Positions 17,851-64,000 are shown, counted from the stretch's first letter. The stretch: DNA of 64,000 bases from Hypanus sabinus (GCF_030144855.1 NC_082733.1:37076001-37140000); one strand, 5' to 3'. Translations and numbers: made by a program. Notes: generated from the letters alone by a model not told the origin.

Positions 17851-18028
17851 GAAATTGTACACGGATCTTTTGATTTATTTATCTTTCACGGCTGGATCTC
17901 CTTTGGTAAAAGAATATTTGTTCATTCTGTGGTAATTACTTTTGTATTTCCCATTGAATTAAAGGACCTATTTTCTTCTGTCTAGATTCCAAGTAGATAC
18001 CCTTACGCCATTGATAAATGAGCAAAGG

Positions 18029-23736: not shown

Positions 23737-24557
23737 TATATTGTGAAATTTCTTTGCAACAATATATTAAAAATTGCTCTAAGTTTCAAGAAGAAATAAA
23801 AAATGAATAGGTAGTGCAAAAAGAGAGAAAAATACATGGGTATGAACAGTTGGCATAGGTTATGGAAACTTTCTGCTCCTGAGTGTAGATAAGTGTATCT
23901 TGTGGGTGCTCAGTAAATCTAACCCATGAACAGACTCCTTGGTTGGAGTTTCTGCTGCTGTTACCTGCTGGTCAAGATGAGGGAGGGCTGGCAGGTGTGG
24001 ACCTCTCCAAGGTGAATAACTGGTGGGGGTGGTGCAGTGGTCAGGGAAGTCACTCCACCCAGCTGATTTGAACATAGAAGGGCACAACACACCACAGACC
24101 CTTCAGCAAACAATGTTACTGATAATTGGGGAGTCTAGTACCAGAGGGCACAGCTGCAGATTACAAGGATGTTAGAACAGAGATGAGAAGGAATTTCTTT
24201 AGCCAAAGATGGTGAATCTGTAGAATTAATGGCCACAGATGGCTGTGGAGGCCAAAACATTGGGTATAGTTAAAGCAAAGGTTACTAGGTTCTTGATTAG
24301 TAAAGATGTCAAAGATTATGGGAAGAAGGCAGGAGAATGGGTTTGAGAGGGATAATAAGTCACGATCACATGGTGGAGCAGACATGTTGGGCTGAATGAC
24401 CTAATTCTTGTGTTATGGAACTTATGCCGACCTTTTAACTTTGCTCTTAAGATCAACCTAAATGTTCCCTCCTGCTAAGTCCTCCGTTTCTCTTTCATCT
24501 ATCCACCTTAAGAGTCTCTGAAATGTCCCTAATATATCTGTTTCACCTTTGTGACAG

Positions 24558-24761
24558 GTCGGCAGAGACGGTCACTGTTCTGTTGAGGATGCCCGCACTG
24601 CAATGCAATTGTACAAGCTAGTTGAAGTTCAGTGGGAAGAGAAGCTTCACAGCGAGTTGTGGACAGAACATGATCACACGGTGTCTGACACAAGCTCTGA
24701 AATCAGTCACTACATGGACGATCAGTACTGGCCTGCTGGATTACACGACGACTGCAAATGA
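24558..24761 (+). CDS. AEN: AEN last coding exon (67 aa plus stop); whole protein 372 aa
   Basis: Acceptor cctttgtgacag; VGRDGHCSVEDARTAMQLYKLVEVQWEE with ExoIII H..D; AEN-type C-terminal YMDDQYWP; TGA at 24759-24761. Missed by the ORF track. Confidence 0.95.
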   Translation, partial: VGRDGHCSVEDARTAMQLYKLVEVQWEEKLHSELWTEHDHTVSDTSSEISHYMDDQYWPAGLHDDCK

Positions 24762-26021
24762 TTGGAGAAGGATTTTTTAAAGTACGTACCTCCAGTGACG
24801 ATAAGCATTAATGCTGCTGATGGACTATTGCAATACAAACTCAGGTTGATTTGCCTGTTGGATGAGGACCAGTTTTTCACCTGTTCTCAGGCCTTCACTG
24901 TCCTGCCAGCAAATTGGCGCTTGTTCCCTCTCAGTGGTGGGTCAGGATCCATGCAGCCATAGTCCAGGATCAGGGCTAAGGTCTCAAGCCTGCTTCAATA
25001 CCAAGTTGTTCAGCATGCCAGTGCAGAATCTGGAGCAAGTTAAGGTGGGGGGGTGGGGGTTATTTGGTGCAATTGGGTCCTTCCAGAGTTCTGACTGAAA
25101 ATTCAACCCATTGTGATCTTAGTCTTGGAGAGAAAATGAATAGACTAGATTTGGTGTGGTGGATAAAGCTGAGTGGTTTTGTTCTGTCAATGTGGTTGAC
25201 CACAAAGGAACAAGAATTGCAACCTGTTAACCATGTTTTCTGTTTTAATACTTATCTTCAACATTTCTACTCACAACTCTGGCATGCAGAAGACAACTGG
25301 TACTGTTTCACTGATACCGGTTGGTCCCAGTTCCCAAATCCTGAAGCTAATGAGCATCAGGCTCTTTAGCTCAGAGAGCCAATCTTCTTTGTGCCCTCGT
25401 TCCAGTTCGCTGTCTAATTCTGAAGTACTGAGTTCAATGTCCCAACTGCTGCCCTTTCAGAAAAGGCCTCCAAGATTGCTGTGGGGTTTGGAGTAGCTGA
25501 TAACTCTCTTGGTCCATGTGACTGTCTCCTGAATAGTTCAGTGTGGTTCATCTTTACTTGGCCTGTACGAAAAGTGGGTGTCAGTGTGAGGCAGGAAGCT
25601 ATGTTCTCATCCTTCCCCAACCCATATTCCTGTGATATCTTGTGGATATACGAAAGTGAGGAGGAAAGTGGAATCTGTTACCATGACTGCTTGTTGAAAA
25701 CAGATCAGTTCTGAAGAGAAATTGTATCAGTAGGCATCTAGAGAGCCCCATTTGGGGGAGTGCTTGGGCTGAGCTACTGTAGGTTTATCACCTGCCACTA
25801 GCAGCACAGTGACACGGTAATAAAGCTGCTGTCTTGTGTCTAGTACCCACAAGTTCAAAGCTGACCTCTGCTGCTATCTGTGTGGAGTTTGCATGTTGTT
25901 CCTGTGACTATATGGATGGTCTTCCACATCTGAGTGACATATAGTATGGTAGATCAATTAGCCATTGTGTAGGCGAGTGGCAGAATCTGGGGAGAGCTGT
26001 TGGGAATGACCATAATACGAA

Positions 26022-33043: not shown

Positions 33044-35084
33044 ACATCGTTGCTGCCATAGGCATGATGGGCCAAAGGGCCTGTTTCTGAACTGTACTGT
33101 TCTACACTCAGTGGTCACTTTACTCGGTACACCTGTATACCTTATTAATGCAAATATCTAATCAGCCTACCATGTGACAGAAACTCAATGCATAAAAGCA
33201 TGCAGACATGGTCAAGAGGTTCAGTTGTTCTTCAGACCAAACATCAGAATCGGGGAAAATTGTGATCTAAATGACTTTGACCATGGAACGATTATTGATG
33301 CCAGACTGGTTAGTTTGAGTATCTCGGAAACTGTTGACCTCTTGGGATTTTCACACATTGCGATCTTATAGCGAGTTTTACAGAGAATGGTGGGAAAAAC
33401 AAGAAAACATCCAGAGAGTGGCAGTTCTGTGCGTGAAAACATCTTGTTAATGAGAGAGGTCAGACGAGAATGGCCAGACTGGTTCAAGCTGACAGGAAGG
33501 TGACAGGAACTCAAATAAATATGTATCATAACCATGGCATGCAGAAGGGCATCTCTGACTGCACACTGAACCTTGTTTGGCTGCAACAGCAGAAGACCAC
33601 AATGGGTTCCACTCCAGTACCTAATAAAACAGACACAGATTGTGCATTGTGAAATTTGATTTTTTCATCAGCAGTAGAGTGAAGTGCATAAAAAAATTCT
33701 AAGCTACAATAGGAAATATATGAAATAAACAAGTACAGTAGCGCAAACTGTGAGCAAGATAGTGAGGTTATGACTGGGGATTATAGCCTTTGTTATAAAT
33801 CCTGTAATTTGGAAGCTGATTTAAAATTTCAGGATGTTAACAGAAACTGAAAAGGCAGATGGTGAGAAACTATGTGCACTGGTCTGAGATCCGAGGATTA
33901 AAGGTTGTCTAACAAGTTAGACTTAAGGACATTTTTGATTTTCCAAAGAGTGAGGTTAGGCAGCACTTTTACACATGGGTAGTGGTAGAAATATAGAAAT
34001 CTCTTCTACAAAATGCAGATGATGCTGGACCAACCATTAAATTTAAATCTGAGTTTGATAAATGTTTGTTTGATTAGTGAATTATTTAAGGACACGGTGG
34101 GAGGGGGAGTGAGCATGTCGGGATTAGGTCAACGATCAGTTGTAAGCTCAGTTTGAGGGGTATGGATAGGGTAAATGCAAGCAGGCTTTTTCCATTGAGG
34201 TTGGGTGAGACTAGAACTAGAGTTCATGGGTTAAGGATGAGAGGTGAAATTTTTAACGGGAACCTGAGATTGGTGAGACTGTGGAATGATCTGCCAGTGG
34301 AAGTAGTGAATGTGGGTTCAATTTCAACATTTAAGAGACATTTGTGTATGTAGGTGGATGGGAGAGCAATTGTCCAGGTGCAGGTCAATAGGAATAGGCA
34401 GAAAAGTAGGTTGGCATGGATCAGATGGGCTGAAGGGCCTGTTGTTATGCCATAGGGTTCTGTGACTCAATGCATGTGGGAAAGGGTTTATGGGACGACT
34501 CATCTTCATCCTGTTCCTGAGTTAATTAAAAGATTAATTAAAATACCACAACATGCAATAGGCTGGCTGCTATTTGGAAACAGGATAATGGAGCAACAGA
34601 CATAAAATGCTGGAGGAACTCAGCCAGTCAGGCAGCATCTCTGAAAATAAATAAACATTTGTGGGAATGGGATAATAGAGTTTCCTTTGTAAGGGGTGAC
34701 GTTCTTCAGAAACTCAAATGTAATGGAAGTTACACCCAAACCTTTTTTTTAACCATCTCCGGCATTTGCAAGGTAAATTAAAGCATCACAGTGTGTGTAC
34801 ACGTATGGAGTCTGTCACAGGTCTTTTTGTCACACAGAGAAATTCATGCAGCTATCTTTTCCTGTCAGATGATCCAGGTTTGTGTATCAACAACTTCTGG
34901 GGAATTGGATAGAAGAATATACACTCGCTCTCTGCCGAAAAGTATTTTTAAGGTGGGGTGTATTCATGTGATTTTACAGTGGCAAGCCAACACAACAATA
35001 AGCAAATAGGACAACATTGTAACCATGGATACTATTAGGTGTGGACGTATATTATCTCTGTTGTTGACTTGATGATACCTTACT

Positions 35085-35160
35085 GAACAGAAAGTGACGA
35101 CAAAGCTGTTGAAATTTGGTTATGCTTTGTCACCAGCAGACGAGGGTTCGGTATAAAGGT
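35085..35160 (+). promoter_or_regulatory. ISG20 copy A proximal promoter: TATA box and disrupted IRF/ISRE motif
   Basis: TATAAA at 35152-35157; GAAAGTGACGAC at 35090-35101. Confidence 0.6.
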
Positions 35161-35244
35161 GCTCGAGCAAATGAGGAAACGGGAGAGCGAAGAGGAAGTT
35201 GCTGTTGCTACATTGGACCCTTTGCAGGGAGTACAAGCTGTACA

Positions 35245-35475
35245 ATGGTAGATCCTTCCAAGTATGTTGCCATGGACTGTGAGATGGTGGGACTTGGCTG
35301 CAATGGCCGTGACAGTGGTCTGGCGCGCTGTAGCATCGTTGATTATGATGGGAAGGTGATCTATGACAAATTTATCAAACCAGATGGGACAATTACAGAT
35401 TACAGGACACCCGTGAGTGGGATTCGCCCATCGGATATGGATACAGCTGTGCCTTATCAGATCGCCAGGGAAGAG
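35245..35475 (+). CDS. ISG20: Interferon-stimulated 20 kDa exonuclease, copy A, exon 1
   Basis: MVDPSKYVAMDCEMVGLG...SGLARCSIV...YDKFIKPDGTITDYRT.VSG: ISG20-type residues with no N-terminal extension; donor GAG|GTAAGT. Confidence 0.9.
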
Positions 35476-38392
35476 GTAAGTTTCCCCTTGTAATACTTCT
35501 TGTAATTATTCAGCCACATAACCATTCTTATTAATCCTTCCTTGAATATGTCTAACATCTGACTGAGAGATCTGGTGAAGGACTACTTGATGGAAGTTTT
35601 ACGTAGCACCCATTGTGACTTCATAAGACCATAAGATATAAGAACAGAATTAGGCCATTTGGCCCATTGAGTTTGGTCCATCATTCCATCATGGCTGATT
35701 TATTATCCTTTTCAACCACATTCTCCTGCCTTCTCCCCATAGCCTTTGATGCCCTGGCTAATCAAGAACCTATCATCCTCTGCCTTAAGTATACCCAATT
35801 ACTTAAGGATATTCAAAACCATTTTAAAGCCAATGGAAAGAGTTGGAAGAATGGCTACTTTGAGAAATTAGGAAAAAGTGATAGCCTGTTTATATCTAAC
35901 AAGCTCACACACGTGATAATAAACAGATTGCTTCAGTAATCTGGTAAATATTGGACCCAGTACAAGGGGAATTACCCCCCTGTTTATTGCCACGAATCTT
36001 TAGCATCTACTTGAGAGCAGAGGGAACCTGAGCTTTCAAACTCCAAGGAGTGCACATCACAAACAACTTCCCATGGTCCCAGAACACAGTCAAGAAAGCT
36101 CACCAATGCTTCAGCTTTCTGAAGGGGCTGAACTTTGCACACTCATACTGGCATCATTCTCCAGTTGCGCAGTAGAGAGCATCTGAACAAGCTGCACCAC
36201 TGCTTGATGTGGAAGCTGCACTGTGGCAGACAGGAATCTCTACAGCGGGTAGTCAAAACTGCCCAGAGCATCACCAGCTCCAGCCCACCCACCACGAAGG
36301 ATATATATGCAGAAAGGTGCTGAAAGAGGCCAGTAACATTGTGAAGGATCCCACCCACCCTGCTCATGAACTGTTTGCCCCACTCCCATCAGGGAGGAGG
36401 CTACGTGACATCCACCAGACTCAAAAGTAGATACTTTCCACAAGCAGTAAGACTGATCAACACCTCCACCCACAAACTCCATCGCGACTTTATTATTTAC
36501 CATTAGTCATTTTATGTACAGCCTAATGATCACTTTATGGACATACAGTCTCTCTAAGTATATAGCTATCTTGTGCATTTATATTTATCACTTGTTTTAT
36601 TATCATTATTTGTTCTTTATCTTTTGTGGTTTTGTTTAAGCTGCATCGGATCCAGCGTAACAATAATTTTGTTCTCCTTACACTTGTATTCATTAATCTA
36701 GTCTAAGGCTCAACCCTTTGAATACAGGATTCTCTTGGCAATGCTATAGAATGATCAGTGTAGGTCTTGTGCTGACGTCTCTTTAGTGGGACTTGAAGCA
36801 TAGCCATACTGGCAGTCATTGTTTCCCAGTCCAAACGTAAGCTGTCAAACCAGTTGTGTTCAGCAGTCGTCAACCAATCAACTTCAGGAATGCTTTGACG
36901 GAACTGAAATGGGAGGCTGTCTATTCTTCTCACATCTCTTCCTCCCCACCCCAACCAATAACTCACGAAGAAACTTAACTGAATTAATTAGTTGACCAAG
37001 AGTCTTAGTGACAAGGCTAGGTTTTGAGGGGCGAAACCAGGAGGGTATTATCAATAGGAGAGATTCTGCAGATGCTGGAAATCCAGAGTAAGACACACAA
37101 AATGCTGGAGGAACTCAGCAGGTCAGGCAACGTCTATGGAAAGGAGTAAAGAGTTGATGCTTTGTGCTGAGATCCTATATCAGATCAGGAAAGGAAGATT
37201 GAAAGAGACAGAATAGGAAGGTGGGGGTGTGCGAGGGGAAGGGGTGCCAGCTGGCAGGTGATAGGTGAAGCCAGATAAGGGGGAAAATAAAAAAAAAACG
37301 TTTAGTAACGTACAAGATGCTGGAGGATCTCCGCAGGTTAGGCAGCATCTATGGAGAGGAATAAAGAGTAAACGTTTCAGGCTGAGACCCATCATCAAGT
37401 ATTTGTCAGATATATTATTAGCTTCCAGTGCATCAAAGCTTTCTAAAACATCAGTAAAGGTTCCCCTGTAAAATATGAACAGATTTCTGAAATTTCAGTG
37501 ATATTAGTAATGATTTTGGATAAAGTGGATTCTCTTTTCCATGGCATGTCATTGGTTCTGGGTGGACTGGGCTCATCTCTGCTGTATCTTGTTTCGGTCC
37601 AGAGTGAAGGGTGTCGATCCAAAATGCCGACTGTTTACTTCCCACCATAGATACTGCCTGACGTGATGGTTTTCCCCCGGCAGTGTGTGTGTTGCTCCAG
37701 ATTCCAAAATCTGCAGTGCCGTGTGTCTCTGTAATCTGATTCCGTCTGATGTTTGTTTGATCAAACAGATCTTTATTTGGAAGTGTTATCAAAAGAAATG
37801 GATCCAAACTAAATAAGTGGAGTCTGAAATACACATCAGCCTTGATGTAATTAAATGTAAATACTCAGTGATAGGTGTCGGAATGTACTGCCTGGTACGG
37901 CAGATACGTCAGAGACTTTCAATAGACGTTTACATGAATGTGTGAGAAATGGAAGGGTATGGACATTGTGTATGCAGAGGGGATTATTTAGAATGGCCAT
38001 TTGATTACTAATTTAATTGGATCGGCACAACACTGTGGGCCGGAAGGCCTGTCCTGCGCTATGATGTTTCTATCTTCTTAAATGCTGGGCTGACAATCCT
38101 TTTCCTGTTATTCATACTTAACATAATTCAGAGTAATTAGCCGGCATCTGTGGCTAAGCAGTTAATATTTGTGTTTACTAACATTATGCTGGGGGCTTCC
38201 AGATAGCTTGACCAACACCCATCCTTCAGACAACACCAACAATCGATTGTTTTATCTCTGTGGGACCTTGCTGTGTGCAAAAAATCAATGGCAGCTCTGA
38301 CACTTTGAAAGCAGCTTGAGGCACCCTGAGGAAAAGTCAGGCAATCTCGGAGTGGAAGTTTGTTGCACTAACATTCTGCTGCTTCCATTCAG

Positions 38393-38593
38393 ATTCTGGA
38401 GATCTTGAAAGGAAAGATTATCGTGGGCCACGATCCCAGGTCTGACTTCTGTGTACTGAATACGGACGTTTCGAACTACGCCATACGGGACACCTCATCG
38501 TGCAAGTTACTGATCACAAAAGCAAAACTGAAAACCGACAGACGTGCCTCATTAAAGGCTCTCTGCCAGAAACTGCTGGGGAAAAGAATACAG
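38393..38593 (+). CDS. ISG20: ISG20 copy A exon 2
   Basis: Acceptor ttccattcag; ILEILKGKIIVGHDPRSDF...RRASLKALCQKLLGKRIQ; donor CAG|GTACAT; 201 nt, same as the AEN middle exon. Confidence 0.9.
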
Positions 38594-39399
38594 GTACATG
38601 AAAGGTCACATGAAACTTCTCTTCCTCTGTAATGCTTCTAATTCTATCCCATCCGTTCTTCAAAGTTTAAAGTTCAAGAAAATATTTTATCAAAGTGCAT
38701 ATATGTCACCGTAGGCTGCCATGGGATACATTTCCTTGTGGGCATTCACAATAAATACAAAGAAACACAACAGAATTAATGAAAAACTGCACGCAACAAA
38801 GACGGCAAACAACCAATGTGCAAAAGACACCAAACTGCAAATACAAAATAATATTAATAATAATACATAAGTAACAAATAAGGAGAACATGAGTTGTAGG
38901 CTCCTCATATGATAAGCCATTCAATCCCCGAATCATTTTTGTGAACCTCCTTTGAACCCTCTCCAATGTCAACATGCCCTCTCTTAGATAAGGGGCATTA
39001 ATGATGATGAGTAGGTACATGAGTAGGAAAGATTTAGAGGAATACAAACTGAACATGAGGGAATGGGATTACCTCAAAGAGATGACTTTGTGGGCCTGGG
39101 CGAGTTGGGCCAAGGGGCTGGTTTTCATGTTGTGTCACTCTGGCTCTACAACAGTGCCGATGTATGATGGAATCCTGGCCTTTACACAGGATCTCTCAAT
39201 GGCCGCACATCTGGCACAAACGGAAGAGCTACTTCATCACAGTTCCGATGACCTAGTTAATCATGACCCCAGCTACCGTCAATGTGGGGTTTGCCTGTTC
39301 TCCCTTTAACCAGCTGGGTTCCTCTAAATATTTCCTCCCACAATCCTAAGACATGAAGGTTAGACAGCCACTGTAACTTCCACCTAGTTGCTTGCAAAT

Positions 39400-40190
39400 T
39401 CATAACACCACAAGGTAGATGCAGATTAGGCCATTCGGCCGAGTAAGTCTGATCTGCCTTTTGATCATGGCTGATTTATTTTCCCTCTCCACCTCATTCT
39501 CCTATCTTCACCCTGTAACCTTTGATACCCTTACCAATCAAGAATGTATCAACCTCTGCTTTAAATCTACCCAATGACTTGATGTCCACAACTGCCTGTG
39601 GCAACGAATTCCGCTGATTCATTACCCTCCAGATAAGGAAATTCCTCATCATCTCTTTTCTAAAGGGATGTCCTCGTATTCTGAGGCATTTCAATCTTTG
39701 TTAGGTTTTGATGAGATCTCCCCTCATCCTTCTGCATACCAGTGAGTACAGGCCCAGAGCCATCAGTCGGTCCTTATATGGTATCGTTTTCGTTCCTGAA
39801 ATCATTCTTGTGAATCTCTTCTGAACCAATGGCAGCACATCCTTTCTTAGATAAGGGGCCCAGAACTGCTCACAATACTCCAAGTGACACCTTATAAAGC
39901 ATCAACTTTACATCCTCCCTTTTATATTCTAGTCCTCTGCAAATGCATACTCACATTGCATTTGCCTTCCCACTACCAACACAATCTCCAATTTAACCTT
40001 TAGAGAACCCTTTGCAACTCGGATTTTTGAATTAAAACAGCCTATGCTTTTATTTCTTCCTCCAAAATACATGACCATGCAATTCCTGGCACTATATTCC
40101 ATCTGCCACTTGCTTGCCCATTCTCCTAATCTGTCTATGTTCCTCTGCAGTCTCGCTGCTTCCTCAACGCTACCTGCCCTCCACCTGTCT
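39400..40190 (-). mobile_element. Old CR1 LINE fragment, also present in the duplicate at about 60540-61330
   Basis: LQRNIDRLGEWASKWQM and EYCEQFWAPYLRKD. Confidence 0.75.
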
Positions 40191-40311
40191 TCGTATTGCA
40201 TAAACAAACTCATAACGTCATGCTGCATGGACGCTGGACCTTAGTGTCTGAACCGACCATCAAGCTTTTATTCACGGGAGTTTAGAAAAATGAGAGTGGA
40301 TCTTATAGAAA

Positions 40312-41300
40312 TCTATCCCACAAGGATCTGTTCTGAGACTTCCACTTTTCGTGATTTTTATTAACGACTTGGATGTGGAGGTAGAAGGGTGGGTTGGCAA
40401 GTTTGCAGATGACACAAAGGTTGGTGGTGTTGTAGATAGTATAAAGGATTGTCAAAAATTGCAGAGAGACATTGATAGGATGCAGAAGTGGCGCGAGAAG
40501 TGGCAGATGGAGTTCAACCCGGACAAGTGTGAGGTGGTACACTTTGGAAGGACAAATCCCAAGGCAGGGTACAAAGTAAATGGCAGGATACTTGATAGTG
40601 TGGAGGAGCAGAGGGATCTGGGGGTACATGTCCACAGATCCCTGAAAGTTGCTTCACAGGTAGGTAGGGTAGTTAAGAAAGCTTATGGGGTGTTAGCTTT
40701 CATAAGTCGAGGGATAGAGTTTAGGAGATGTGATGTAATGTTCCAGCTCTGTAAAACTCTGGTTAGGCCACACTTGGTGTACTGTGTCCAGTTCTAGTTG
40801 CCTCACTATAGGAAGGATGTGAAAGCATTGGAAAGGGTACAGAGGAGGTTTACCAGGATGCTGCCTGGTTTAGAGAGTAAGGATTATGATCAGGGATTAA
40901 GGGAGCTAGGGCTTTACTCTTTGGAGAGAAGGAGGATGAGAGGAGACATAATAGAGGTGTGCAAGATATTAAGAGGAATAGATAGAGTGGATAGCCAATG
41001 CCTCTTCCCCAGGGCACCACTGCTCAGTACAAGAGGACATGGCTTTTAGGTAAGGGGAGGGAAGTTCAAGGGGGATATTAGAGGAAGGTTTTTCACTCAG
41101 AGAGTGGTTGGTGCGTGGAATGCACTGCCTGAGTCAGTGGTGGAGGCAGATACACTAGTGAAGTTTAAGAGACTACTAGACAGATATATGGAGGAATTTA
41201 AGGTGGGGGGTTATATAGGAGGCAGGGTTTGAGGGTCGGCACAACATTATGGGCCAAAGGGCCTGTAACGTGCTGTACTATTCTATGTTCTATGTTCTAT
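40312..41300 (+). mobile_element. Young 5'-truncated CR1 LINE specific to copy A
   Basis: FINDLD...KFADDTK...WQMEFNPDKC...LVRPHL; (TTCTATG)n tail; empty site at about 61447 in the duplicate. Confidence 0.9.
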
Positions 41301-41759
41301 ATACTATGACCAGGACTGGGTAAATTAGATGCAGAAAGGAGTTCCTAATGATGAAGTCTGGATTGGATTTTTTTTTATCATCGCATGTTCCGAGACAGTG
41401 AAAAGCTTTTGTTTTGCATACTAGCCAGGCAGATCATACCATATTTCATTATGTCAATGCAGTTATAGAGGAAGTGCGGGGCAGGTAGACAAAGTCAAGG
41501 ACCAGGGAGTCACAGTGTAAGGATAAAGGAGTAAGTTCAACGTTCAAAGTAAAGTTTATTATCAGAGTACATACATGTCACCACATACAACCCTGAGATT
41601 CTTTTTTCTGCAGGCATACTTGTCAAATCTATAAAACAGTAACTGTAAACAGGATCAATGGACAACAAACTGTGCAAGTGCAGATATTTAAAAAGCAATA
41701 AAGAATAAGCATGAAATAACAAGATAAAAGAGTCCTTAACTGAGTGTAGTTATCTCCTT

Positions 41760-42930
41760 TTGTTCAAAGAGCCTGATAGTTGAGGGGTAGTAACCGAACT
41801 TGAAACTGCTGGTGTGAGTCCTGAGGCAGTTGTACCTTCTACCTGATGGCTACAGCAAGAAAAGAGCCTGGCCTAGGTGGTGAGGATCTTTGGTGATTGA
41901 TGTACCATCAATAACTCTCGGAGACGTGAGGCAAGGTATAGTCTTTTATTGGCTGGAAGAAAGAACAAGCAGCAATTGACCACCGCACTACATCCTGGAG
42001 ACTGAGGCTGGGGCTGTCTCTCCAATCGTCTTTATACCAGGGTCCGTGGGAGGAGCCACAGGAGCAGTCAACGGGGGGGGGGGGGGGGGGCGTGTCCAGA
42101 CGGGTATATGTAGTTCACCACAATGATGGACGCTGCTTTTCTACGGCAACATTTCATGTCAATGTGCTCAATGATTTGGAGGGTTTTCCCGTGATGTACT
42201 GGGCCGAATCCATAAACTTTTGAAGGATTTTCCGCTCAAAGGCATTGGTGTTCCCAAACCAGGCTGTAATGCAACAAGTCAATACACTTCCAATCACACG
42301 TCTGTAGAAGTTTGCCAAGGTTTTTGATGACATGCCAAACTCTCACAGGCTCCTGTAGAAGTAGAGGTACTGTCGTGCTTTCTTCGCAATTATAATTATA
42401 TGATAGGTCCAGGCCAGGTCCACTGAGATAGTGACATTCAGGAATTTAAAGTTACTGGCCCTGTCCACCTCGGATCCTTTGATGATTACTGGCTCTTGGA
42501 CCGTTGTTTTCCCTCTCCTGAAGTCAGCAATTAGTTCCTTGGTCTTATTGACATTGAGTGAGAGGTTGTTGTTATTACACCACTCAGCCAAATTTTCAAT
42601 TTCCCTCCTGTATGCTGATTCATCACCCCCTTTGTTACAGCCCACATCAGTGGTGACATCGACAAACTTGTGTATGGTGTTGGAACTGTACTTAGCCGCA
42701 CAGTCAAAGGCATGAAGCGAGTAGAGCAGGGGTTAAGTACACATCCTTGTGGAGCTCCTGTGCTGATGGAGATTGTGGAGGAAATGTTTTTTCCAATCCA
42801 AACTGACTGGGCTCTACAAGTGAGAAATCCAAGATCCAATTGCAAAAGAGTGTATTGAGGCTCAGGTCTTGAAGTTTACTGATTAGTTTTGAGGGGATGA
42901 TGGTGTTAAATGCCGAGCTGTATTCGAAAA
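41760..42930 (-). mobile_element. Rex1/Babar LINE fragment, duplicated at about 61915-63075
   Basis: [33 protein letters not shown]. Confidence 0.8.
41898..42122 (-). mobile_element. Short solo LTR (family length about 205-225 bp); other copies at 51267-51472 (+), 53550-53762 (-) and 62045-62271 (-)
   Basis: TGTGG...CATCA termini with internal TATA-like and AATAAA motifs; 5-bp TSD gtgat/atgat. Confidence 0.75.
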
Positions 42931-43255
42931 AGAATACCCTGATGAAGGGTCGCGACCCAAAACCTCAACTGTTCACTCTTTTCCATTGATGCTGCCTGTC
43001 CTGCAGAGTTCCCCCAGCATTGTGTGTGTTGCATAGAACAGAGAAATGTCTTCTCCCAGGGGAATTTATGAAATTCTCTATCTGAAAATTAGATATTATT
43101 GTAGAAATCAAAGGACATGGTGAGAAATCAACAAGGTATTAAAGTAACAAAGAATCTGCTGGAGGATCTCAGCTGTCAGCTGGTCAATCAGTGCCTGTGG
43201 TTGAGACCGTGCCTCTGGGCTGAGAGTGGAGAGGGGAGATGGGCATTATAAAGTG

Positions 43256-49317: not shown

Positions 49318-49464
49318 GACAGCTACAAAGGACACTCGTCTGTGGAGGATGCAAGTGCAGCGATGGAGCTCTTCAGACTTGTAGATAACACGTGGGAGCT
49401 TCAACTCACCAATGGTCTCAGGGTGGAGATAGTAAACCGATTTGAAGGACGTAACAGATATTAA
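49318..49464 (+). CDS. ISG20: ISG20 copy A last exon (48 aa plus stop); whole protein 192 aa
   Basis: Acceptor ctcctttccttcaacag; DSYKGHSSVEDASAAMELFRLV with ExoIII; TAA at 49462-49464; AATAAA at 49467 and 49510. Missed by the ORF track. Confidence 0.9.
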   Translation, partial: DSYKGHSSVEDASAAMELFRLVDNTWELQLTNGLRVEIVNRFEGRNRY

Positions 49465-55420: not shown

Positions 55421-57105
55421 GAAACATCCAGTAAGTAACAGTTCTGTGGGTGAAAACATCTTGTTAATGAGGGAGGTCAGACGAGAATGGCCAGACTGGT
55501 TCAAGCTGACAGGAAGGTGACAGGAACTCAAATAAATATGTATCATAACCATGGCATGCAGAAGGGCATCTCTGACTGCACACTGAACCTTGTTTGGCTA
55601 CAACAGCAGAAGACCACAATGGGTTCCACTCCTGTACCTAATAAAACAGACACTGATTGTGCATCGTGAAATTTGATTTTTTCATCAGCAGTAGAGTGAA
55701 GTGCATAAAAAATTCTAAGTTACAATAGGAAATATATGAAATAAACAAGTACAGTAGCGCAAACTGTGAGCAAGATAGTGAGGTTATGACTGGGGATTAT
55801 AGCCTTTGTTATAAATCCTGTAATTTGGAAGCTGATTTAAAATTTCAGGATGTTAACAGAAACTGAAAAGGCAGATGGTGAGAAACTATGTGCACTGGTC
55901 TGAGATCCGAGGATTAAAGGTTGTCTAACAAGTTAGACTTAAGGACATTTTTGATTTTCCAAAGAGTGAGGTTAGGCAGCACTTTTACACATGTAGTGGT
56001 AGAAATATGGAAATCTCTTCTACAAAATGCAGATGATGCTGGACCAACCATTAAATTTAAATCTGAGTTTGATAAATGTTTGTTTGATTAGTGAATTATT
56101 TAAGGACACGGTGGGAGGGGGAGTGAGCATGTCGGGATTAGGTCAACGATCAGTTGTAAGCTCAGTTTGAGGGGTATGGATAGGGTAAATGCAAGCAGGC
56201 TTTTTCCATTGAGGTTGGGTGAGACTAGAACTAGAGTTCATGGGTTAAGGATGAGAGGTGAAATTTTTAACGGGAACCTGAGATTGGTGAGACTGTGGAA
56301 TGATCTGCCAGTGGAAGTGGTGAATGTGGGTTCAATTTCAACATTTAAGAGACATTTGTGTATGTAGGTGGATGGGAGAGCAATTGTCCAGGTGCAGGTC
56401 AATAGGAATAGGCAGAAAAGTAGGTTGGCATGGATCAGATGGGCTGAAGGGCCTGTTGTTATGCCATAGGGTTCTGTGACTCAATGCATGTGGGAAAGGG
56501 TTTATGGGACGACTCATCTTCATCCTGTTCCTGAGTTAATTAAAAGATTAATTAAAATACCACAACATGCAATAGGCTGGCTGCTATTTGGAAACAGGAT
56601 AATGGAGCAACAGACATAAAATGCTGGAGGAACTCAGCCAGTCAGGCAGCATCTCTGAAAATAAATAAACATTTGTGGGAATGGGATAATAGAGTTTCCT
56701 TTGTAAGGGGTGACGTTCTTCAGAAACTCAAATGTAATGGAAGTTATACCCAAACCTTTTTTTTAACCATCTCTGGCATTTGCAAGGTAAATTAAAGCAT
56801 CACAGTGTGTGTACACGTATGGAGTCTGTCACAGGTCTTTTTGTCACACAGAGAAATTCATGCAGCTATCTTTTCCTGTCAGATGATCCAGGTTTGTGTA
56901 TCAACAACTTCTGGGGAATTGGATAGAAGAATATCCACTCGCTCTCTGCCGAAAAGTATTTTTAAGGTGGGGTGTATTCATGTGATATTGCAGTGGCAAG
57001 CCAACACAAAAAAATAAGCAAATAAGACAACATTGTAACCATGGATATTATTAGATGTGGGCGTATTCTATCTCTGTTGTTGACTTGATGATACTTTACT
57101 GAACA

Positions 57106-57172
57106 GAAAGTGAAACAAAGCTGTTGAAATTTAGTTATGCTTTGACACCAGCAGACGAGGGTTCGGTATAAA
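57106..57172 (+). promoter_or_regulatory. ISG20 copy B promoter: IRF-E/ISRE plus TATA box
   Basis: GAAAGTGAAAC at 57106-57116; TATAAA at 57167-57172. Confidence 0.7.
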
Positions 57173-57259
57173 GGTGATCGAGCAAATGAGGAAACAGGAG
57201 AGTGCAGAGGAAGTTGCTGTTGCTACATTGGACCCTTTGCAGGGAGTACAAGCTGTACA

Positions 57260-57490
57260 ATGATAGATCCTTCCAAGTATGTTGCCATGGACTGTGAGAT
57301 GGTGGGACTTGGCCGCAATGGCCGTGACAGTGGTCTGGCGCGCTGTAGCATCGTAGATTATGATGGGCAGTTAATCTATGACAAATTTATCAAACCAGAT
57401 GGGACAATTACAGATTACAGGACGCACGTGAGTGGGATTCGCCCATTGGATATGGAAACAGCTGTGCCTTATCAGATCGCCAGGGAAGAG
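57260..57490 (+). CDS. ISG20: ISG20 copy B exon 1
   Basis: MIDPSKYVAMDCEMVGLG; open frame; donor GAG|GTACAT. Confidence 0.88.
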
Positions 57491-59412
57491 GTACATTTCC
57501 CCGTTGTAATACTTCTTGTAATTATTCAGCCACATAACCATTCTTATTAATCCTTCCTTGAATATGTCTAACATTTGACTGAGAGATCTGGTGAAGGACT
57601 ACTTGATGGAAGTTTTTATGTAGCACCCATGGTGACATCATAAGATTTAGGTCACTTGGTCACTTTATGGACATACAGACTTTCTAAGCATATAAGCTAT
57701 CTTGTGTATTTATATTTATTGTGTTATGTTTTATTATCAATATTTGTTCTTTAACTTTTGTGGTTTTGTTTAAGCTGCATCGGATCCAGCAATAATTTTG
57801 TTCTCCTTACACTTGTGTTCATTAATCTAGTCTAAGGCTCAACCCTTTGAATACAGGATTCTCTTGGCAATGCTATAGAATGATCAGTGTAGGTCTTGTG
57901 CTGACGTCTCTTAAGTGGGACTTGAAGCATAGCCATATGGGCAGTCATTGTTCCCCAGTCCAAACTTAAGCTGTCAGACCAGTTGTGTTCAGCAGTCGTC
58001 AACCAATCAACTTCAGGAATGCTTTGATGGAACTGAAATGGGAGGCTGTCTATTCTTCTCACATCTCTTCCTCCCCACCCCAACCAATAACTCACCAAGA
58101 AACTTAACTGAATTAACTAGTTGCCCAAGAATCTTAGTGACAAGGCTGGTTTTTGAGGAGCGAAACCAAGAGCGTATTATCAATAGGAGAGATTCTGCAG
58201 ATGCTGGAAATCCAGAGCAAGACACACAAAATGCTGGAGGAACTCAGCAGGTCAGGCAACGTCTATGGAAAGGAGTAAAGAGTTGATGCTTTGTGCTGAA
58301 ATCCTACATCAAATCAGGAAAGGAAGATTGAAAGAGACAGAATAGGAAGGTGGGGGTGTGCGAGGGGAAGGGGTGCCAGCTGGCAGGTGATAGGTGAAGC
58401 CAGATAAGGGGGAAAATAAAAAAAAACGTTTAGTAATGTACAAGATGCTGGAGGATCTCCACAGGTTAGGCAGCATCTATGGAGAGGAATAAAGAGTAAA
58501 CGTTTCAGGCTGAGACCCATCATCAAGTATTTGTCAGATATATTATTAGCTTCCAGTGCATCAAAGCTTTCTAAAACATCAGTAAAGGTTCCCCTGTAAA
58601 ATATGAACAGATTTCTGAAATTTCAGTGATATTAGTAATGATTTTGGATAAAGTGGATTCTCTTTTCCATGGCATGTCATTGGTTCTGGGCGGACTGGGC
58701 TCATCTCTGCTGTATCTTGTTTCAGTCCAGAGTGAAGGGTGTCGATCCAAAATGCCGACTGTTTACTTCCCACCATAGATACTGCCTGACGTGATGGTTT
58801 TCCCCCGGCAGTGTGTGTGTTGCTCCAGATTCCAAAATCTGCAGTGCCGTGTGTCTCTGTAATCTGATTCCGTCCGATGTTTGTTTGATCAAACAGATCT
58901 TTATTTGGAAGTGTTATCAAAAGAAATGGATCCAAACTAAATAAGTGGAGTCTGAAATACATTTAATTACATCAAGGCTGATGTGTAAATACTCAGTGAT
59001 AGGTGTCGGAATGTACTGCCCGGTACGGCAGATACGTCAGAGACTTTCAATAGACGTTTACATGAATGTGTGAGAAATGGAAGGGTATGGACATTGTGTA
59101 TGCAGAGGGGATTATTTAGAATGGCCATTTGATTACTAATTTAATTGGATCGGCACAACACTGTGGGCCGGAAGGCCTGTCCTGCGCTATGATGTTTCTA
59201 TCTTCTTAAATGCTGGGCTGACAATCCTTTTCCTGTTATTCATACTTAACATAATTCAGAGTAATTAGCCGGTATCTGTGGCTAAGCAGTTAATATTTGT
59301 GTTTACTAACATTATGCTGGGGGCTTCCAGATAGCTTGACCGACACCCATCCTTCAGACAACACCAACAATCGATTGTTTTCTCTCTGAGCCACCTTGCT
59401 ATGTGCAAAAAA

Positions 59413-59540
59413 CGAAGGGTCTCAACCCGAAACGTCGACATTGCTTCTCCTTATAGATGCTGCCTGGCATGCTGTGTTCCACCAGCATTTTGTGTGTGTG
59501 TATTGTTTGAATTTCCAGCATCTGCAAATTTCCTTGTGTT
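59413..59540 (+). mobile_element. Short Penelope-tail insertion specific to copy B
   Basis: Flanked by TGCAAAAAA at 59404-59412 and 59541-59549; empty site near 38280. Confidence 0.75.
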
Positions 59541-59658
59541 TGCAAAAAAATCAATGGCTGCTCTGACACTTTGAAAGCAGCTTGAGATATCCTGAGGAAA
59601 AGTCGGGCAAACTCGGAGTGGAAGTTTGTTGCACTAACATTCTGCTGTTTCCATTCAG

Positions 59659-59859
59659 ATTTTGAAGATTTTGAAAGGAAAGATTATCGTGGGCCACGAT
59701 CCCAGGCCTGACTTCTACGTACTGAAAATGGACATTTCGAACTACGCCACACGGGACACCTCAACGTGCAAGTTACTGATCGCAAGAGCAAACCTGAAAA
59801 CCGACAGACGTGCCTCGTTAAAAGTTCTCTGCCAGAAACTGCTGGGGCAAAGAATACAG
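59659..59859 (+). CDS. ISG20: ISG20 copy B exon 2; exon 3 expected about 40 bp past the window end
   Basis: ILKILKGKIIVGHDPRPDF...LLGQRIQ; AG/GT intact; the window end aligns to about 49279. Confidence 0.88.
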
Positions 59860-62800
59860 GTACAGAGTTGGTTTGCAAAGTCACATGAAACTTCTTTTCC
59901 TCTGTAATGCTTCACCTTCTATTCCATCCATTCTATTCCATAGATGGCAAACAAGCAATGTGCAAACGACAACAAACTGCAAATACAAAATAATATTAAT
60001 AATAATACATAAGTAACAAATAAGGAGAACATGAGTTGTAGGCGCCTCATATGATAAGCCATTCAATCCCCGAATCATTTTTGTGAACCTCCTTTGAACC
60101 CTCTCCAATGTCAACATGCCCTCTCTTAGATAAGGGGCATTAATGATGATGAGTAGGTACATGAGTAGGAAAGATTTAGAGGAATACAAACTGAACATGA
60201 GGGAATGGGATTACCTCAAAGAGATGACTTTGTGGGCCTGGGCGAGTTGGGCCAAGGGGCTGGTTTTCATGTTGTGTCACTCTGGCTCTACAACAGTGCC
60301 GATGTATGATGGAATCCTGGCCTTTACACAGGATCTCTCAATGGCCGCACATCTGGCACAAACGGAAGAGCTACTTCATCACAGTTCCGATGACCTAGTT
60401 AATGATGACTTCAGCTACTGTCAATGTGGGGTTTGCCTGTTCTCCCTTTAACCAGCTGGGTTCCTCTAAATATTTCCTCCCACAATCCTAAGACATGAAG
60501 GTTAGACAGCCACTGTAACTTCCACCTAGTTGCTTGCAAGTTCATAACACCACAAGGTAGATGCAGATTAGGCCATTCAGCCGAGTAAGTCTGATCTGCC
60601 TTTTGATCATGGCTGATTTATTTTCCCTCTCCACCTCATTCTCCTATCTTCACCCTGTAACCTTTGATACCCTTACCAATCAAGAATGTATCAACCTCTG
60701 CTTTAAATCTACCCAATGACTTGATGTCCACAACTGCCTGTGGCAACGAATTCCGCTGATTCATTACCCTCCAGATAAGGAAATTCCTCATCATCTCTTT
60801 TCTAAAGGGATGTCCTCGTATTCTGAGGCATTTCAATCTTTGTTAGGTTTTGATGAGATCTCCCCTCATCCTTCTGCATACCAGTGAGTACAGGCCCAGA
60901 GCCATCAGTCGGTCCTTATATGGTATCGTTTTCGTTCCTGAAATCATTCTTGTGAATCTCTTCTGAACCAATGGCAGCACATCCTTTCTTAGATAAGGGG
61001 CCCAGTGACACCAATACTCCAAGTGACACCTTATAAAGCATCAACTTTACATCCTCCCTTTTATATTCTAGTCCTCTGCAAATGCATACTCACATTGCAT
61101 TTGCCTTCCCACTACCAACACAATCTCCAATTTAACCTTTAGAGAACCCTTTGCAACTCGTATTTTTGAATTAAAACAGCCTATGCTTTTATTTCTTCCT
61201 CCAAAATACATGACCATGCAATTCCTGGCACTATATTCCATCTGCCACTTGCTTGCCCATTCTCCTAATCTGTCTATGTTCCTCTGCAGACTCGCTGCTT
61301 CCTCAACGCTACCTGCCCTCCACCTGTCTTCGTATTGCATAAACAAACTCATAACGTCATGCTGCATGGACGCTGGACCTTAGTGTCTGAACCGACCATC
61401 AAGCTTTTATTCACGGGAGTTTAGAAAAACGAGAGTGGAGCTTATATAAACTATGACCAGGACTGGGTAAATTAGATGCAGGAAGGAGTTCCTAATAATA
61501 AAGTCTGGATTGGATTGTTTTTTATCATTGCATGTTCCGAGACAGTGAAAAGCTTTTGTTTTGCATACTAGCCAGGCAGATCATACCATATTTCATTATA
61601 TCAATGCAGTTATAGAGGAGGTGCAAGGGAGGTAGACAAAGTTAAGGACCAGGGAGTCACAGTGTAAGGATAAATGAGTAAGTTCAACTTTCAAAGTAAA
61701 GTTTATTATCAGAGTACATACATGTCACCATATACAACCCTGAGATTCTTTTCCCTGCAGGCATACTTGTCAAATCTATAAAACAGTAACTGTAAACAGG
61801 AGCAATGGACAACAAACTGTGCAAGTGCAGATATTTAAAAAGCAATAAATAATAAGCATGAAATAACAAGATAAAAGAGTCCTTAACTGAGTGTAGTTAT
61901 CTCCTTTTGTTCAAAGAGCCTGATAGTTGAGGGGTAGTAACCGAACTTGAAACTGCTGGTGTGAGTCCTGAGGCAGTTGTACCTTCTACCTGATGGCCAC
62001 AGCAAGAAAAGAGCCTGGCCTGGGTGGTGAGGATCTTTGGTGATTGATGTATCGTCAATAACTCTCGGAGACGTGAGGCAAGGTATAGTCTTTTATTGGC
62101 TGGAAGAAAGAACAAGCAGCAATTGACCACCGCACTACATCCTGGAGACTGAGGCTGGGGCTGTCTCTCCAATCGCCTTTATACCAGGGTCCGTGGGAGG
62201 AACCACAGGAGCAGTCAACGGGGGGGGGGGGGGGGGGGCGTGTCCAGACGGGGTATATGTAGTTCACCACAATGATGGACGCTGCTTTTCTACGGCAACA
62301 TTTCATGTCAATGTGCTCAATGATTTGGAGGGTTTTCCCGTGATGTACTGGGCCGAATCCATAAACTTTTGAAGGATTTTCCGCTCAAAGGCATTGGTGT
62401 TCCCAAACCAGGCTGTAATGCAACAGTCAATACACTTCCAATCACACGTCTGTAGAAGTTTGCCAAGGTTTTTGATGACATGCCAAACTCTCACAGGCTC
62501 CTGTAGAAGTAGAGGTGCTGTCGTGCTTTCTTCGCAATTATAATTATATGACAGGTCCAGGCCAGGTCCACTGAGATAGTGACATTCAGGAATTTAAAGT
62601 TACTGGCCCTGTCCACCTCGGATCCTTTGATGATTACTGGCTCTTGGACCGTTGTTTTCCCTCTCCTGAAGTCAGCAATTAGTTCCTTGGTCTTCTTGAC
62701 ATTGAGTGAGAGGTTGTTGTTATTACACCACTCAGCCAAATTTTCAATTTCCCTCCTGTATGCTGATTCATCACCCCCTTTGATACAGCCCACATCAGTG

Positions 62801-64000
62801 GTGACATCGACAAACTTGTGTATGGTGTTGGAACTGTACTTAGCCGCACAGTCAAAGGCATGAAGCGAGTAGAGCAGGGGTTAAGTACACATCCCTGTGG
62901 AGCTCCTGTGCTGATGGAGATTGTGGAGGAAATGTTTTTTCCAATCCAAACTGACTGGGCTCTACAAGTGAGAAATCCAAGATCCAATTGCAAAAGAGTG
63001 TATTGAGGCTCAGGTCTTGAAGTTTACTGATTAGTTTTGAGGGGATGATGGTGTTAAATGCTGAGCTGTATTCAATAAAGAATACCCTGATGAAGGGTCG
63101 CGACCCAAAACCTCAACTGTTCACTCTTTTCCATTGATGCTGCCTGTCCTGCAGAGTTCCTCCAGCATTGTGTGTGTTGCATAGAACAGAGAAATGTCTT
63201 CTCCCAGGGGAATTTATGAAATTCTCTATCTGAAAATTAGATATTATTGTAGAAATCAAAGGACATGGTGAGAAATCAACAAGGTATTAAAGTAACAAAG
63301 AATCTGCTGGAGGATCTCAGCTGTCAGCTGGTCAATCAGTGCCTGTGGTTGAGACCGTGCCTCTGGGCTGAGAGTGGAGAGGGGAGATGGGCATTATAAA
63401 GTGGAATGGAGGAGGGGTGAGGGAGTAGGTGATCGGTGGAACGAGGAGGGTGTGAAGGGTGGTGATCCCGGTGGTGGGAGGTGGAAGACTGAGGCAGGTG
63501 AGTGATAGGCAAAAGCCGACGGAAAAGATTAAAATGAAAATTGTTGATTTTGGATGATCTGTCGTAATTATATTAAATGGTTCAAAGTTCACAGCAGATA
63601 AAAGAAGCACAATGGAATCAATGATAAAATACACACAAAGGCAGACAAACAATGTGCAAAAGATGGCAAATTGCCCAAATACAAAAATAATAATAATAAT
63701 AATCAATAGGTAATAGTGAGAACATAAATTGTAGAGTCTTTGAAAGAGAGTCCATATGTTGTAGAATCTGTTCAGTGTTGAGGTGAGTGAAGTCATCCAC
63801 ACTGGTTCAGGAGCCTGATGGTTGAGGGGTAAAAGCTTTTCCTGAACCTGCTGGTGTGGGACCTGGGGCTCCTCTACCTCCTTCCCGAAGGCTGCAGTGA
63901 GAAGGGAGCATAACCTGGATGGTGAAACCTGCTCTGGGGCCAAATTGTTTGCTCCTCCCCTAACTTCTATGTTTTTACAACGTGTCTCTGATTTTTCCCA

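What the first reader, a model, noticed from the sequence alone, without database searches (positions are those of the whole stretch)
57100..57175. Interferon response element intact in ISG20-B but broken in ISG20-A
Seen: copy B has GAAAGTGAAAC about 50 bp upstream of TATAAA. The aligned site in copy A (35090-35101) reads GAAAGTGACGAC, which loses the second GAAA and creates a TGACG CRE/ATF half-site. Known: GAAANNGAAA is the IRF/ISGF3 core, and human ISG20 is induced through an ISRE. Inference: the paralogs have split their regulation, with one interferon-inducible and one rewired or silenced.
Basis: partly seen in the sequence, partly recalled or inferred. Interest (0 to 1): 0.78.

Follow-up and report, generated by a model that had tools for sequence, protein, structure and literature searches.

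The report
Stingray ISG20 copy B gained ISRE
In the Atlantic stingray's duplicated ISG20 antiviral gene, the two copies do differ at an interferon-response motif, but the "broken" version in copy A is the old, conserved ray sequence and the perfect motif in copy B is the new one, so this is a probable gain rather than a loss, and its effect on expression is untested.

Summary
Copy B reads GAAAGTGAAAC at 57106-57116, 50 bp before TATAAA. Copy A reads GAAAGTGACGAC at 35090-35101. The window is the Hypanus sabinus AEN-ISG20 locus, with ISG20 tandemly duplicated.

The interpretation has the direction backwards. Sawfish, a skate genome and skate mRNAs all carry the copy-A sequence, and a shark carries a CpG-decayed form of the same length. 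Copy A therefore keeps the ancestral element. That element sits in the most conserved 20-mer of the upstream region. Copy B made a canonical ISRE from it by a 1-bp deletion plus G>A. The reverse strand, TGTTTCACTTTCT, matches the published human ISG20 ISRE except at one free position. The electric ray Narcine made the same change independently.

The promoter assumption is weak:
- The TATA box is specific to the Hypanus lineage, and TATAAA occurs about once per kb in the window.
- Skate mRNAs start 171-307 nt upstream of the ATG, so the site is usually inside the 5' leader.
- Annotated copy-A proteins begin about 10 kb upstream.

Copy A is intact. It has other ISRE-like sites, one shared with B at -1.4 kb and a cluster found only upstream of A at 29.36 kb. 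"Silenced" is not supported.

This is an ordinary kind of cis-regulatory turnover with a reversed reading. Function is untested.

The parts
57106..57116 (+). Copy B ISRE/IRF-E core GAAAGTGAAAC. The reverse strand of 57105-57117 reads TGTTTCACTTTCT.
   Evidence: It is derived relative to four other ray sequences. It matches the consensus AGTTTCN2TTTCN and the listed human ISG20 ISRE TGTTTCAGTTTCT (PMC5985295).
35090..35101 (+). Copy A element GAAAGTGACGAC. This is the ancestral batoid form: one IRF half-site (AACAGAAAG) followed by TGACG.
   Evidence: It is identical in Pristis L001, Rhinoraja L003 and the skate mRNAs L007-L013. It lies in the most conserved 20-mer of the upstream 420 bp.
57167..57172 (+). 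TATAAA of copy B. It is specific to the Hypanus lineage and is shared with copy A at 35152-35157.
   Evidence: It aligns to ACAAAGG in Pristis, Stegostoma and Heptranchias.
57260..57490 (+). Copy B coding exon 1 (77 codons, ExoI/ExoII motifs).
59659..59859 (+). Copy B coding exon 2. Coding exon 3 lies just beyond the window end, at about 64036-64185.
35245..35475 (+). Copy A coding exon 1.
38393..38593 (+). Copy A coding exon 2.
49318..49464 (+). Copy A coding exon 3, stop codon included.
33405..43255 (.). Duplicated unit A. Its partner is 55422-63403.
55422..63403 (.). Duplicated unit B.
35120..35139 (+). Pyrimidine-rich tract plus an invariant CAG. The NCBI copy-A models use it as a 3' splice site. 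The copy B equivalent is 57135-57154, with a B-derived T>A at 57145.
24758..24781 (+). The ATG..AAA stretch (MIGEGFFK) that opens the NCBI copy-A proteins. Its ATG overlaps the AEN stop codon, and a GT donor follows at 24782.
   Evidence: The stretch is missing from the copy-B side, where the duplication ends at 54428. Pristis has no donor there.
18011..24761 (+). AEN-like (apoptosis-enhancing nuclease) gene upstream. Coding exons seen include 18524-18772 (part of the 18011-18847 ORF), 21024-21227 and 24558-24761.
   Evidence: 90% identical to Mobula 'apoptosis-enhancing nuclease-like'.
33843..33852 (+). ISRE-core match GAAACTGAAA(AG), 1.4 kb upstream of copy A. Copy B has the same at 55859-55868.
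   Evidence: It lies in a conserved block, but Pristis and Rhinoraja read GAAAYTGATAAG there.
29356..29404 (+). ISRE cluster found only upstream of copy A (GGAAATGGAAACTGAAAAT ... GAAACTGAAAAT), 5.9 kb before copy A's ATG.
   Evidence: The segment is not duplicated upstream of copy B and has no equivalent in Pristis.
57041..57088 (+). Conserved upstream ATG in an ACCATGG context, opening a 15-codon upstream ORF. Copy A has the same at 35025-35072.

Best explanation
The window is the AEN-ISG20 locus of the Atlantic stingray, with ISG20 tandemly duplicated into copies A and B. About 150 bp upstream of the ATG there is an element conserved across rays. Its invariant core is GAAAGTGA and its ancestral form is GAAAGTGACGAC. 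Copy A keeps that ancestral form. In copy B, a 1-bp deletion plus a G>A change turned it into a canonical interferon-stimulated response element, GAAAGTGAAAC. The reverse strand, TGTTTCACTTTCT, has two tandem GAAA half-sites at the spacing that IRF1 and ISGF3 need. The likely result (inferred, not shown) is that copy B gained stronger or more direct IRF/ISGF3-driven induction. Copy A keeps the ancestral regulation: a single IRF half-site next to TGACG, plus more distant ISRE-like sites. Copy B is also the more changed copy in other ways. Its protein branch is longer. It lacks the 7 kb upstream segment with the A-only ISRE cluster, it lacks part of intron 1, and its exon-1 splice donor is altered. 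Shown: the sequences, the direction of change, the conservation and the convergence with Narcine. Inferred: factor binding, interferon inducibility, and the position of the transcription start in Hypanus.
For: - Sequences and homology of the two sites.
- Species and gene identity.
- Direction of change: Pristis, Rhinoraja and skate mRNAs share copy A's 12-mer. Both differences inside the motif are derived in copy B. Heptranchias has the A-length version with CG replaced by CA.
- Conservation: the 20-mer holding the site is the most conserved in the 420 bp before the ATG across six ray sequences, and GAAAGTGA is the longest invariant run.
- Motif quality: it differs from the listed human ISG20 ISRE only at an N position of AGTTTCN2TTTCN. 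About 0.01 such matches are expected by chance in 600 bp on both strands.
- Convergence: Narcine has the same derived 11-mer at the orthologous place, yet shares almost none of copy B's other derived changes. The protein tree groups A, B and Mobula together, apart from Narcine.
- Copy B more derived: 14 versus 7 polarised differences upstream of the ATG, 15 versus 8 amino-acid changes, and branch lengths 0.13 versus 0.049.
- Divergence islands: A/B divergence peaks at the proximal region and the exons, inside otherwise nearly identical duplicates.
- Precedent: human ISG20 is induced through a single ISRE and IRF1 (Gongora 2000, as cited in PMC9157404 and PMC5388505).
Against: - There are no expression, binding or transcription-start data for Hypanus.
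- In a skate the orthologous site lies inside the 5' leader of most mRNAs, with 5' ends 171-307 nt upstream of the ATG. In the annotated copy-A transcripts it would be intronic. It may therefore not sit upstream of the start site.
- The TATA box is lineage-specific, and TATAAA is common in the window.
- The excess of copy-B-derived changes is not statistically significant (binomial p about 0.2).
- dN/dS between the copies is about 1, which fits relaxed constraint as well as adaptation.
- Most rays and sharks examined have no ISRE within 500 bp of the ATG, so a proximal ISRE is not required for this gene family here.
- The closest relative, Mobula, could not be read, so the gain cannot be dated relative to the duplication.
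Confidence: 0.5

Rival explanations
1. One reading: the ISRE is ancestral, and copy A lost it by mutation, which created a CRE half-site and silenced or rewired copy A.
For: Human ISG20 uses a proximal ISRE. Narcine has the intact 11-mer at the same position. The NCBI copy-A models start from a distant upstream exon.
Against: Copy A's exact 12-mer is present in Pristis, Rhinoraja and an unidentified skate, and Heptranchias has its length. Under any ray phylogeny the common ancestor of Hypanus and Pristis had the copy-A state. Copy A is intact and is the slower-evolving copy.
Confidence: 0.06
2. Neutral turnover. The change in copy B is one of many substitutions in a fast-diverging segment. It resembles an ISRE by accident and has no regulatory consequence, because the site lies in the transcribed leader or an intron rather than in a promoter.
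For: There are 21 differences in 420 bp. dN/dS is about 1. The skate 5' ends lie upstream of the site. The copy-A models splice in downstream of it. TATAAA is common.
Against: The site is the best-conserved element of the region, so changes there are unlikely to be neutral. The same two-step change arose independently in Narcine. It matches the ISRE at every constrained position, flanks included. Published tables list ISREs at intragenic and intronic positions (PMC5985295 Table 1).
Confidence: 0.2
3. The conserved element is not an IRF site at all. It could be a site for another factor that needs GTGACGAC (for example a bZIP/IRF composite), or an RNA-level signal in the 5' leader. On this reading copy B destroyed it under relaxed constraint, so copy B is the copy that lost ancestral regulation.
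For: The CpG-containing GTGACGAC is kept in three ray lineages. The site is transcribed in the skate. Copy B also carries other derived, possibly degenerative changes: the exon-1 donor reads GTACAT where every other sequence has G at +5, a T>A in the pyrimidine tract, a deletion in intron 1, and loss of the upstream 7 kb.
Against: The part invariant across all rays is the GAAAGTGA half, which is an IRF-type half-site. Narcine tolerates the same change in its only listed copy. Copy B's coding sequence and catalytic residues are intact.
Confidence: 0.2

Closest known systems
Human ISG20 promoter ISRE (Gongora et al. 2000, Nucleic Acids Res 28:2333, as cited in PMC9157404 and PMC5388505; sequence TGTTTCAGTTTCT in Table 1 of PMC5985295)
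   Same: It belongs to the same gene family and the same neighbourhood, with AEN immediately upstream. It is a single proximal ISRE. Copy B's reverse strand, TGTTTCACTTTCT, is identical at every constrained position, including the unusual leading TG.
   Different: The stingray motif is not inherited from a common ISRE at this position. It is derived within rays, while sharks carry ISRE-like motifs at other positions and in the other orientation. The human promoter is TATA-less, whereas Hypanus has a lineage-specific TATAAA 50 bp downstream. Binding and induction are untested here.
Cis-regulatory divergence of young tandem duplicates by gain or loss of transcription-factor sites (general, from established knowledge)
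   Same: The two copies are mostly 96-98% identical, with one canonical site present in one copy only. Protein evolution is asymmetric and the flanking content differs.
   Different: The direction is a gain on a conserved precursor, not degenerative loss. The same gain recurs in a second ray order.
IRF half-site / IRF element, and composite IRF-bZIP elements (from own knowledge; a lead, not tested)
   Same: The ancestral form GAAAGTGACGAC has one GAAA half-site preceded by AA-N2 (AACAGAAA). [quoted passage not shown] It is followed by TGACG.
   Different: From recollection (not checked here), the spacing (GAAA, one base, then TGACG) does not match described AP-1-IRF composite elements. No binding data exist.

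Membership tests
ISRE (interferon-stimulated response element) | Sequence match to AGTTTCN2TTTCN / GAAANNGAAAC | tested here: met
   Copy B, 57105-57117 reverse strand, reads TGTTTCACTTTCT. Copy A fails: it has no match within 500 bp of its ATG even allowing 1 mismatch.
ISRE (interferon-stimulated response element) | Located in the proximal promoter, close to and usually upstream of the transcription start | tested here: inconclusive
   The motif is 50 bp upstream of a TATAAA, but that TATA is lineage-specific and the hexamer is common. Skate mRNAs start upstream of the orthologous site. No Hypanus 5' ends were available.
ISRE (interferon-stimulated response element) | Bound by ISGF3 or IRF1, and needed for interferon induction | not testable with these tools
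   This needs EMSA or ChIP and reporter or qPCR assays.
ISRE (interferon-stimulated response element) | Conserved at the orthologous position in related species | tested here: not met
   Only Narcine shares it. Pristis, Rhinoraja, the skate mRNAs and copy A have GACGAC. Only the first half-site, GAAAGTGA, is invariant.
ISG20 (DEDDh 3'-5' exonuclease, interferon-stimulated gene 20 kDa) | RNase_T/DEDDh exonuclease domain with ExoI, ExoII and ExoIII residues intact | tested here: met
   Pfam RNase_T on exon 1: copy B reaches the Pfam cut-off (24.9 bits against 24); copy A falls just under it (23.3 bits). DCEMVG, GHD and GHSSVED are present in both copies. Copy B's third exon was read from protein P0001, not from the window.
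ISG20 (DEDDh 3'-5' exonuclease, interferon-stimulated gene 20 kDa) | Orthology: best hits are ISG20, and AEN lies immediately upstream | tested here: met
   That AEN and ISG20 are neighbours in human is from own knowledge.
ISG20 (DEDDh 3'-5' exonuclease, interferon-stimulated gene 20 kDa) | Induced by interferon | not testable with these tools
   No paper in the library mentions both ISG20 and elasmobranchs.

The most novel reading that the evidence does not exclude
Rays carry a conserved 'pre-ISRE' (GAAAGTGACGAC) in the ISG20 leader/promoter, and it has been converted to a canonical ISRE at least twice independently, in Narcine and in Hypanus copy B. In Hypanus the conversion followed or accompanied the gene duplication. 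It would mark the birth of a fast-evolving, directly interferon-driven antiviral paralog beside a conservative ancestral copy. That would be a natural example of repeated, selection-driven creation of an interferon-response site.
Probability: 0.25. Interest if true: 0.5.

Novelty: new member of a known kind. Interest (0 to 1): 0.33.

Why it matters
If copy B's new ISRE works, this locus would be a clean natural experiment. Two neighbouring paralogs differ at a defined two-change site, and the ancestral state is known from four other rays. That would let one ask how an antiviral gene becomes directly interferon-responsive in cartilaginous fishes, where interferon-stimulated promoters are almost unstudied. 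As it stands, it is a sequence-level case of binding-site turnover between young duplicates. The main value of this check is the correction: the change is a gain in copy B, not a loss in copy A, and the assumed TATA-driven start is unproven.

Tried and rejected
- One search failed because I gave exon coordinates one base out of frame. It was repeated correctly.
- DNA for Mobula birostris (the closest outgroup), for the Hypanus record itself and for Hemiscyllium could not be fetched because the files were too large. Amblyraja isoform P0005 is not on record. The gain therefore could not be dated within stingrays, and copy B's third exon was taken from protein P0001.
- The Gongora 2000 paper (PMC102735) is not held. 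Its content is cited through PMC9157404, PMC5388505 and PMC5985295.
- I considered that the invariant CAG with its pyrimidine tract marks an ancestral non-coding first exon upstream, as I recall for human ISG20. This is not supported as ancestral. Skate mRNAs run through the site unspliced, and Pristis has no GT donor after its AEN stop codon.
- I considered an ancient duplication, with copy B orthologous to the Narcine type. This was rejected. A, B and Mobula group together in the protein tree, and Narcine shares only 3 of copy B's 14 derived upstream changes, two of them the motif itself.
- I considered positive selection on the proteins, because the exons are 6.5% diverged against 0-2% in most of the introns. 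But dS is raised as well and dN/dS is about 1. A mosaic from gene conversion, with divergence islands at the exons and the proximal region, fits better.
- The A-only ISRE cluster at 29.36 kb has no equivalent in the colinear Pristis intergenic region, so it is not a conserved ancestral promoter.
- The bacterial promoter scanner was not used because it does not apply to a vertebrate genome.
Nothing else was changed.

Full report
**What is in the window**

[quoted passage not shown] A second Hypanus protein, P0002, matches the upstream copy.
- Copy A has coding exons at 35245-35475, 38393-38593 and 49318-49464.
- Copy B has coding exons at 57260-57490 and 59659-59859. Its third exon lies just past the window end.
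- Upstream lies an AEN-like gene, whose last exon is 24558-24761. It is 90% identical to Mobula "apoptosis-enhancing nuclease-like".
- Copies A and B belong to a tandem duplication (33405-43255 and 55422-63403), mostly 96-98% identical.
- Both copies keep the DEDDh motifs. Exon 1 of both hits Pfam RNase_T: copy B reaches the cut-off and copy A falls just under it.

**The observation**

Copy B has GAAAGTGAAAC at 57106-57116, TATAAA at 57167-57172 and its ATG at 57260. Copy A has GAAAGTGACGAC at 35090-35101 and TATAAA at 35152-35157.

The strict 11-mer is rare: 4 matches in the window against 0.95 expected. The reverse strand of 57105-57117 is TGTTTCACTTTCT. The published consensus is AGTTTCN2TTTCN, and the human ISG20 ISRE is listed as TGTTTCAGTTTCT. 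Copy B differs from the human element only at a free position (PMC5985295).

**Direction of the change**

I fetched the orthologous loci of Pristis pectinata (L001), Narcine bancroftii (L002), Rhinoraja longicauda (L003), Stegostoma (L004), Callorhinchus (L005) and Heptranchias (L006). I also fetched spliced RNA-seq contigs of an unidentified skate, L007-L014. These are about 90% identical to Rhinoraja in the exons, and the species is not Amblyraja.

| Sequence | State at the site |
|---|---|
| Pristis, Rhinoraja, skate mRNAs, Hypanus copy A | GAAAGTGACGAC |
| Narcine, Hypanus copy B | GAAAGTGAAAC |
| Heptranchias | same length as copy A, with both CG replaced by CA |

Both differences inside the motif, a 1-bp deletion and a G>A, are therefore derived in copy B. 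Whatever the ray phylogeny, the common ancestor of Hypanus and Pristis had the copy-A state.

Narcine appears to have reached the same sequence independently. It shares only 3 of copy B's 14 derived upstream changes, two of which are the motif itself. The protein tree places A, B and Mobula together, away from Narcine.

**The site is a conserved element in its "broken" form**

Across six ray sequences, the 20-mer CTGAACAGAAAGTGACGACA is the most conserved 20-nt stretch in the 420 bp before the ATG. GAAAGTGA is the longest invariant run. TGACG is therefore conserved, not created in copy A. Copy A still has one IRF-type half-site (AACAGAAA). No ISRE-like 11-mer, even with one mismatch, lies within 500 bp of the ATG in copy A, Pristis, Rhinoraja or Callorhinchus. 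The sharks carry CAAAGTGAAAC at other positions on the other strand.

**Is this a promoter?**

- The Hypanus TATAAA aligns to ACAAAGG in Pristis, Stegostoma and Heptranchias. The sharks have their own TATAAAA about 45 nt further downstream.
- TATAAA occurs about once per kb in the window.
- The skate mRNAs are correctly spliced at the coding introns. They are colinear with the genome for up to 315 nt upstream of the ATG.
- Four skate contigs begin with the SMART template-switch oligonucleotide, complete or truncated, which gives 5' ends about 307, 249, 189 and 171 nt upstream of the ATG. The longest start at a conserved E-box (CACGTGAT; CATGTGAT in Hypanus), about 30 nt after a TA-rich stretch. 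In the skate, then, the element is usually inside the 5' leader.
- In Hypanus, both NCBI copy-A proteins (194 and 236 aa) open with MIGEGFFK. That peptide is encoded at 24758-24781, overlaps the AEN stop codon and is followed by GTACGT. They then continue from about 35137, which lies between the motif and the TATA.
- That upstream piece is missing on the copy-B side, where the duplicated fragment of the AEN last exon stops at 54428 and carries a stop codon. Pristis has no donor at that place.
- I could not obtain any Hypanus transcript ends.

**Other interferon-type motifs**

GAAANNGAAA occurs 13 times in the window against 4.3 expected.

- Both copies share GAAACTGAAAAG 1.4 kb upstream (33843 and 55859). 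It lies in a conserved block where the outgroups read GATAAG.
- Only copy A has a dense cluster at 29356-29404 that includes a perfect GAAATGGAAACT. The cluster lies in the 24.7-31.9 kb segment that was not duplicated. It has no equivalent in the colinear Pristis intergenic region.

Copy A is therefore not obviously without interferon-type input.

**How the copies have diverged**

- Divergence is mosaic. Many 200-bp windows have 0-2 differences. The proximal upstream region has 15 per 200, and the region around exon 2 has up to 27 per 200.
- Exons 1-2 differ at 28 of 432 nt, with dN about 0.06-0.07 and dS about 0.06-0.09.
- The proteins differ at 26 of 192 residues: 15 derived in B, 8 in A and 3 unresolved. 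Branch lengths are 0.13 for B and 0.049 for A.
- Copy B also has a derived exon-1 donor (GTACAT, where every other sequence has G at +5). It has lost about 900 bp of intron 1 that is partly conserved in Pristis.
- Copy A is the conservative copy and copy B the changing one, although the asymmetry counts are not significant on their own (p about 0.2).

**Most likely mechanism**

Copy B converted a conserved single-half-site element into a two-half-site ISRE of the type that IRF1 and ISGF3 bind. Human ISG20 is induced through just such a single element (Gongora 2000). I consider a gain of direct interferon/IRF responsiveness in copy B the best single reading, at about 0.5. Two alternatives are each about 0.2. 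One is no functional consequence. The other is that copy B simply damaged an ancestral element whose function is something else.

**Verdict**

This is a familiar kind of event, binding-site turnover between young duplicates of an interferon-stimulated gene. The modest point of interest is the apparently convergent gain in two ray orders. Interest is about 0.33.

Noticed in passing
window 43256-48674: An LTR retroelement present only in copy A's intron 2. The two direct repeats are 840 and 841 bp (99.8% identical), have TG..CA ends and are flanked by a 4-5 bp target-site duplication (AGTG). Copy B shows the empty site at about 63395-63405. The minus strand holds one intact 1069-aa ORF (44528-47737) with SCAN (capsid-like) and integrase domains, but no reverse transcriptase or protease hit.
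   Followed up: partly
window 33405-40316 compared with 55422-61454: A/B divergence is mosaic. Long stretches have 0-2 differences per 200 bp. Islands of 7-13% lie at the proximal upstream region with exon 1 and around exon 2. This suggests gene conversion that spares the functional parts, or an older duplication than the flanks imply.
   Followed up: partly
window 57041-57088 and 35025-35072: An upstream ATG in a strong ACCATGG context is conserved in all rays examined (ACCATGA in Stegostoma). In both Hypanus copies it opens a 15-codon upstream ORF. In Pristis and the skate the upstream ORF runs into or through the GAAAGTGACGAC element. This points to possible translational control if the leader is transcribed, as it is in the skate.
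   Followed up: partly
window 54243-54428: A duplicated fragment of the AEN last exon lies upstream of copy B. It carries an in-frame TAG at 54312-54314 and is cut off before the AEN stop codon. This marks one breakpoint of the duplication.
   Followed up: yes
window 24486-24496 and 54172-54182 (minus strand): GAAAGAGAAAC, a strict ISRE-core match, lies about 60 bp upstream of the AEN last exon. It is copied along with that exon upstream of copy B, about 260 bp before the ATG used by the NCBI copy-A models. Conservation in other species was not checked.
   Followed up: no
window 35628-36527: About 900 bp are present in copy A's intron 1 and absent from copy B. One part (about 35812-35976) is homologous to Pristis intron 1, so copy B has a deletion. 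Another part (about 35620-35805) is a dispersed repeat with copies elsewhere in the window and in other species.
   Followed up: partly
window 57491-57496: Copy B's exon-1 splice donor is GTACAT. Copy A and Pristis have GTAAGT, and all six other sequences keep G at +5. This is a copy-B-derived weakening of the donor.
   Followed up: partly
window 57207-57213 (copy A 35192-35198): GAGGAAG, an ETS/PU.1-type core within AGAGGAAGTTGCTGTTGC, is the second-longest invariant run in the ray upstream alignment, about 50 bp before the ATG.
   Followed up: no
L008:1-20, L003 about 2620-2640, window about 56981-56988: The longest skate mRNAs begin at a conserved E-box, CACGTGAT (CATGTGAT in Hypanus). Human ISG20 basal expression is reported to involve USF-1 (PMC9157404), which from own knowledge binds CACGTG E-boxes.
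   Followed up: no
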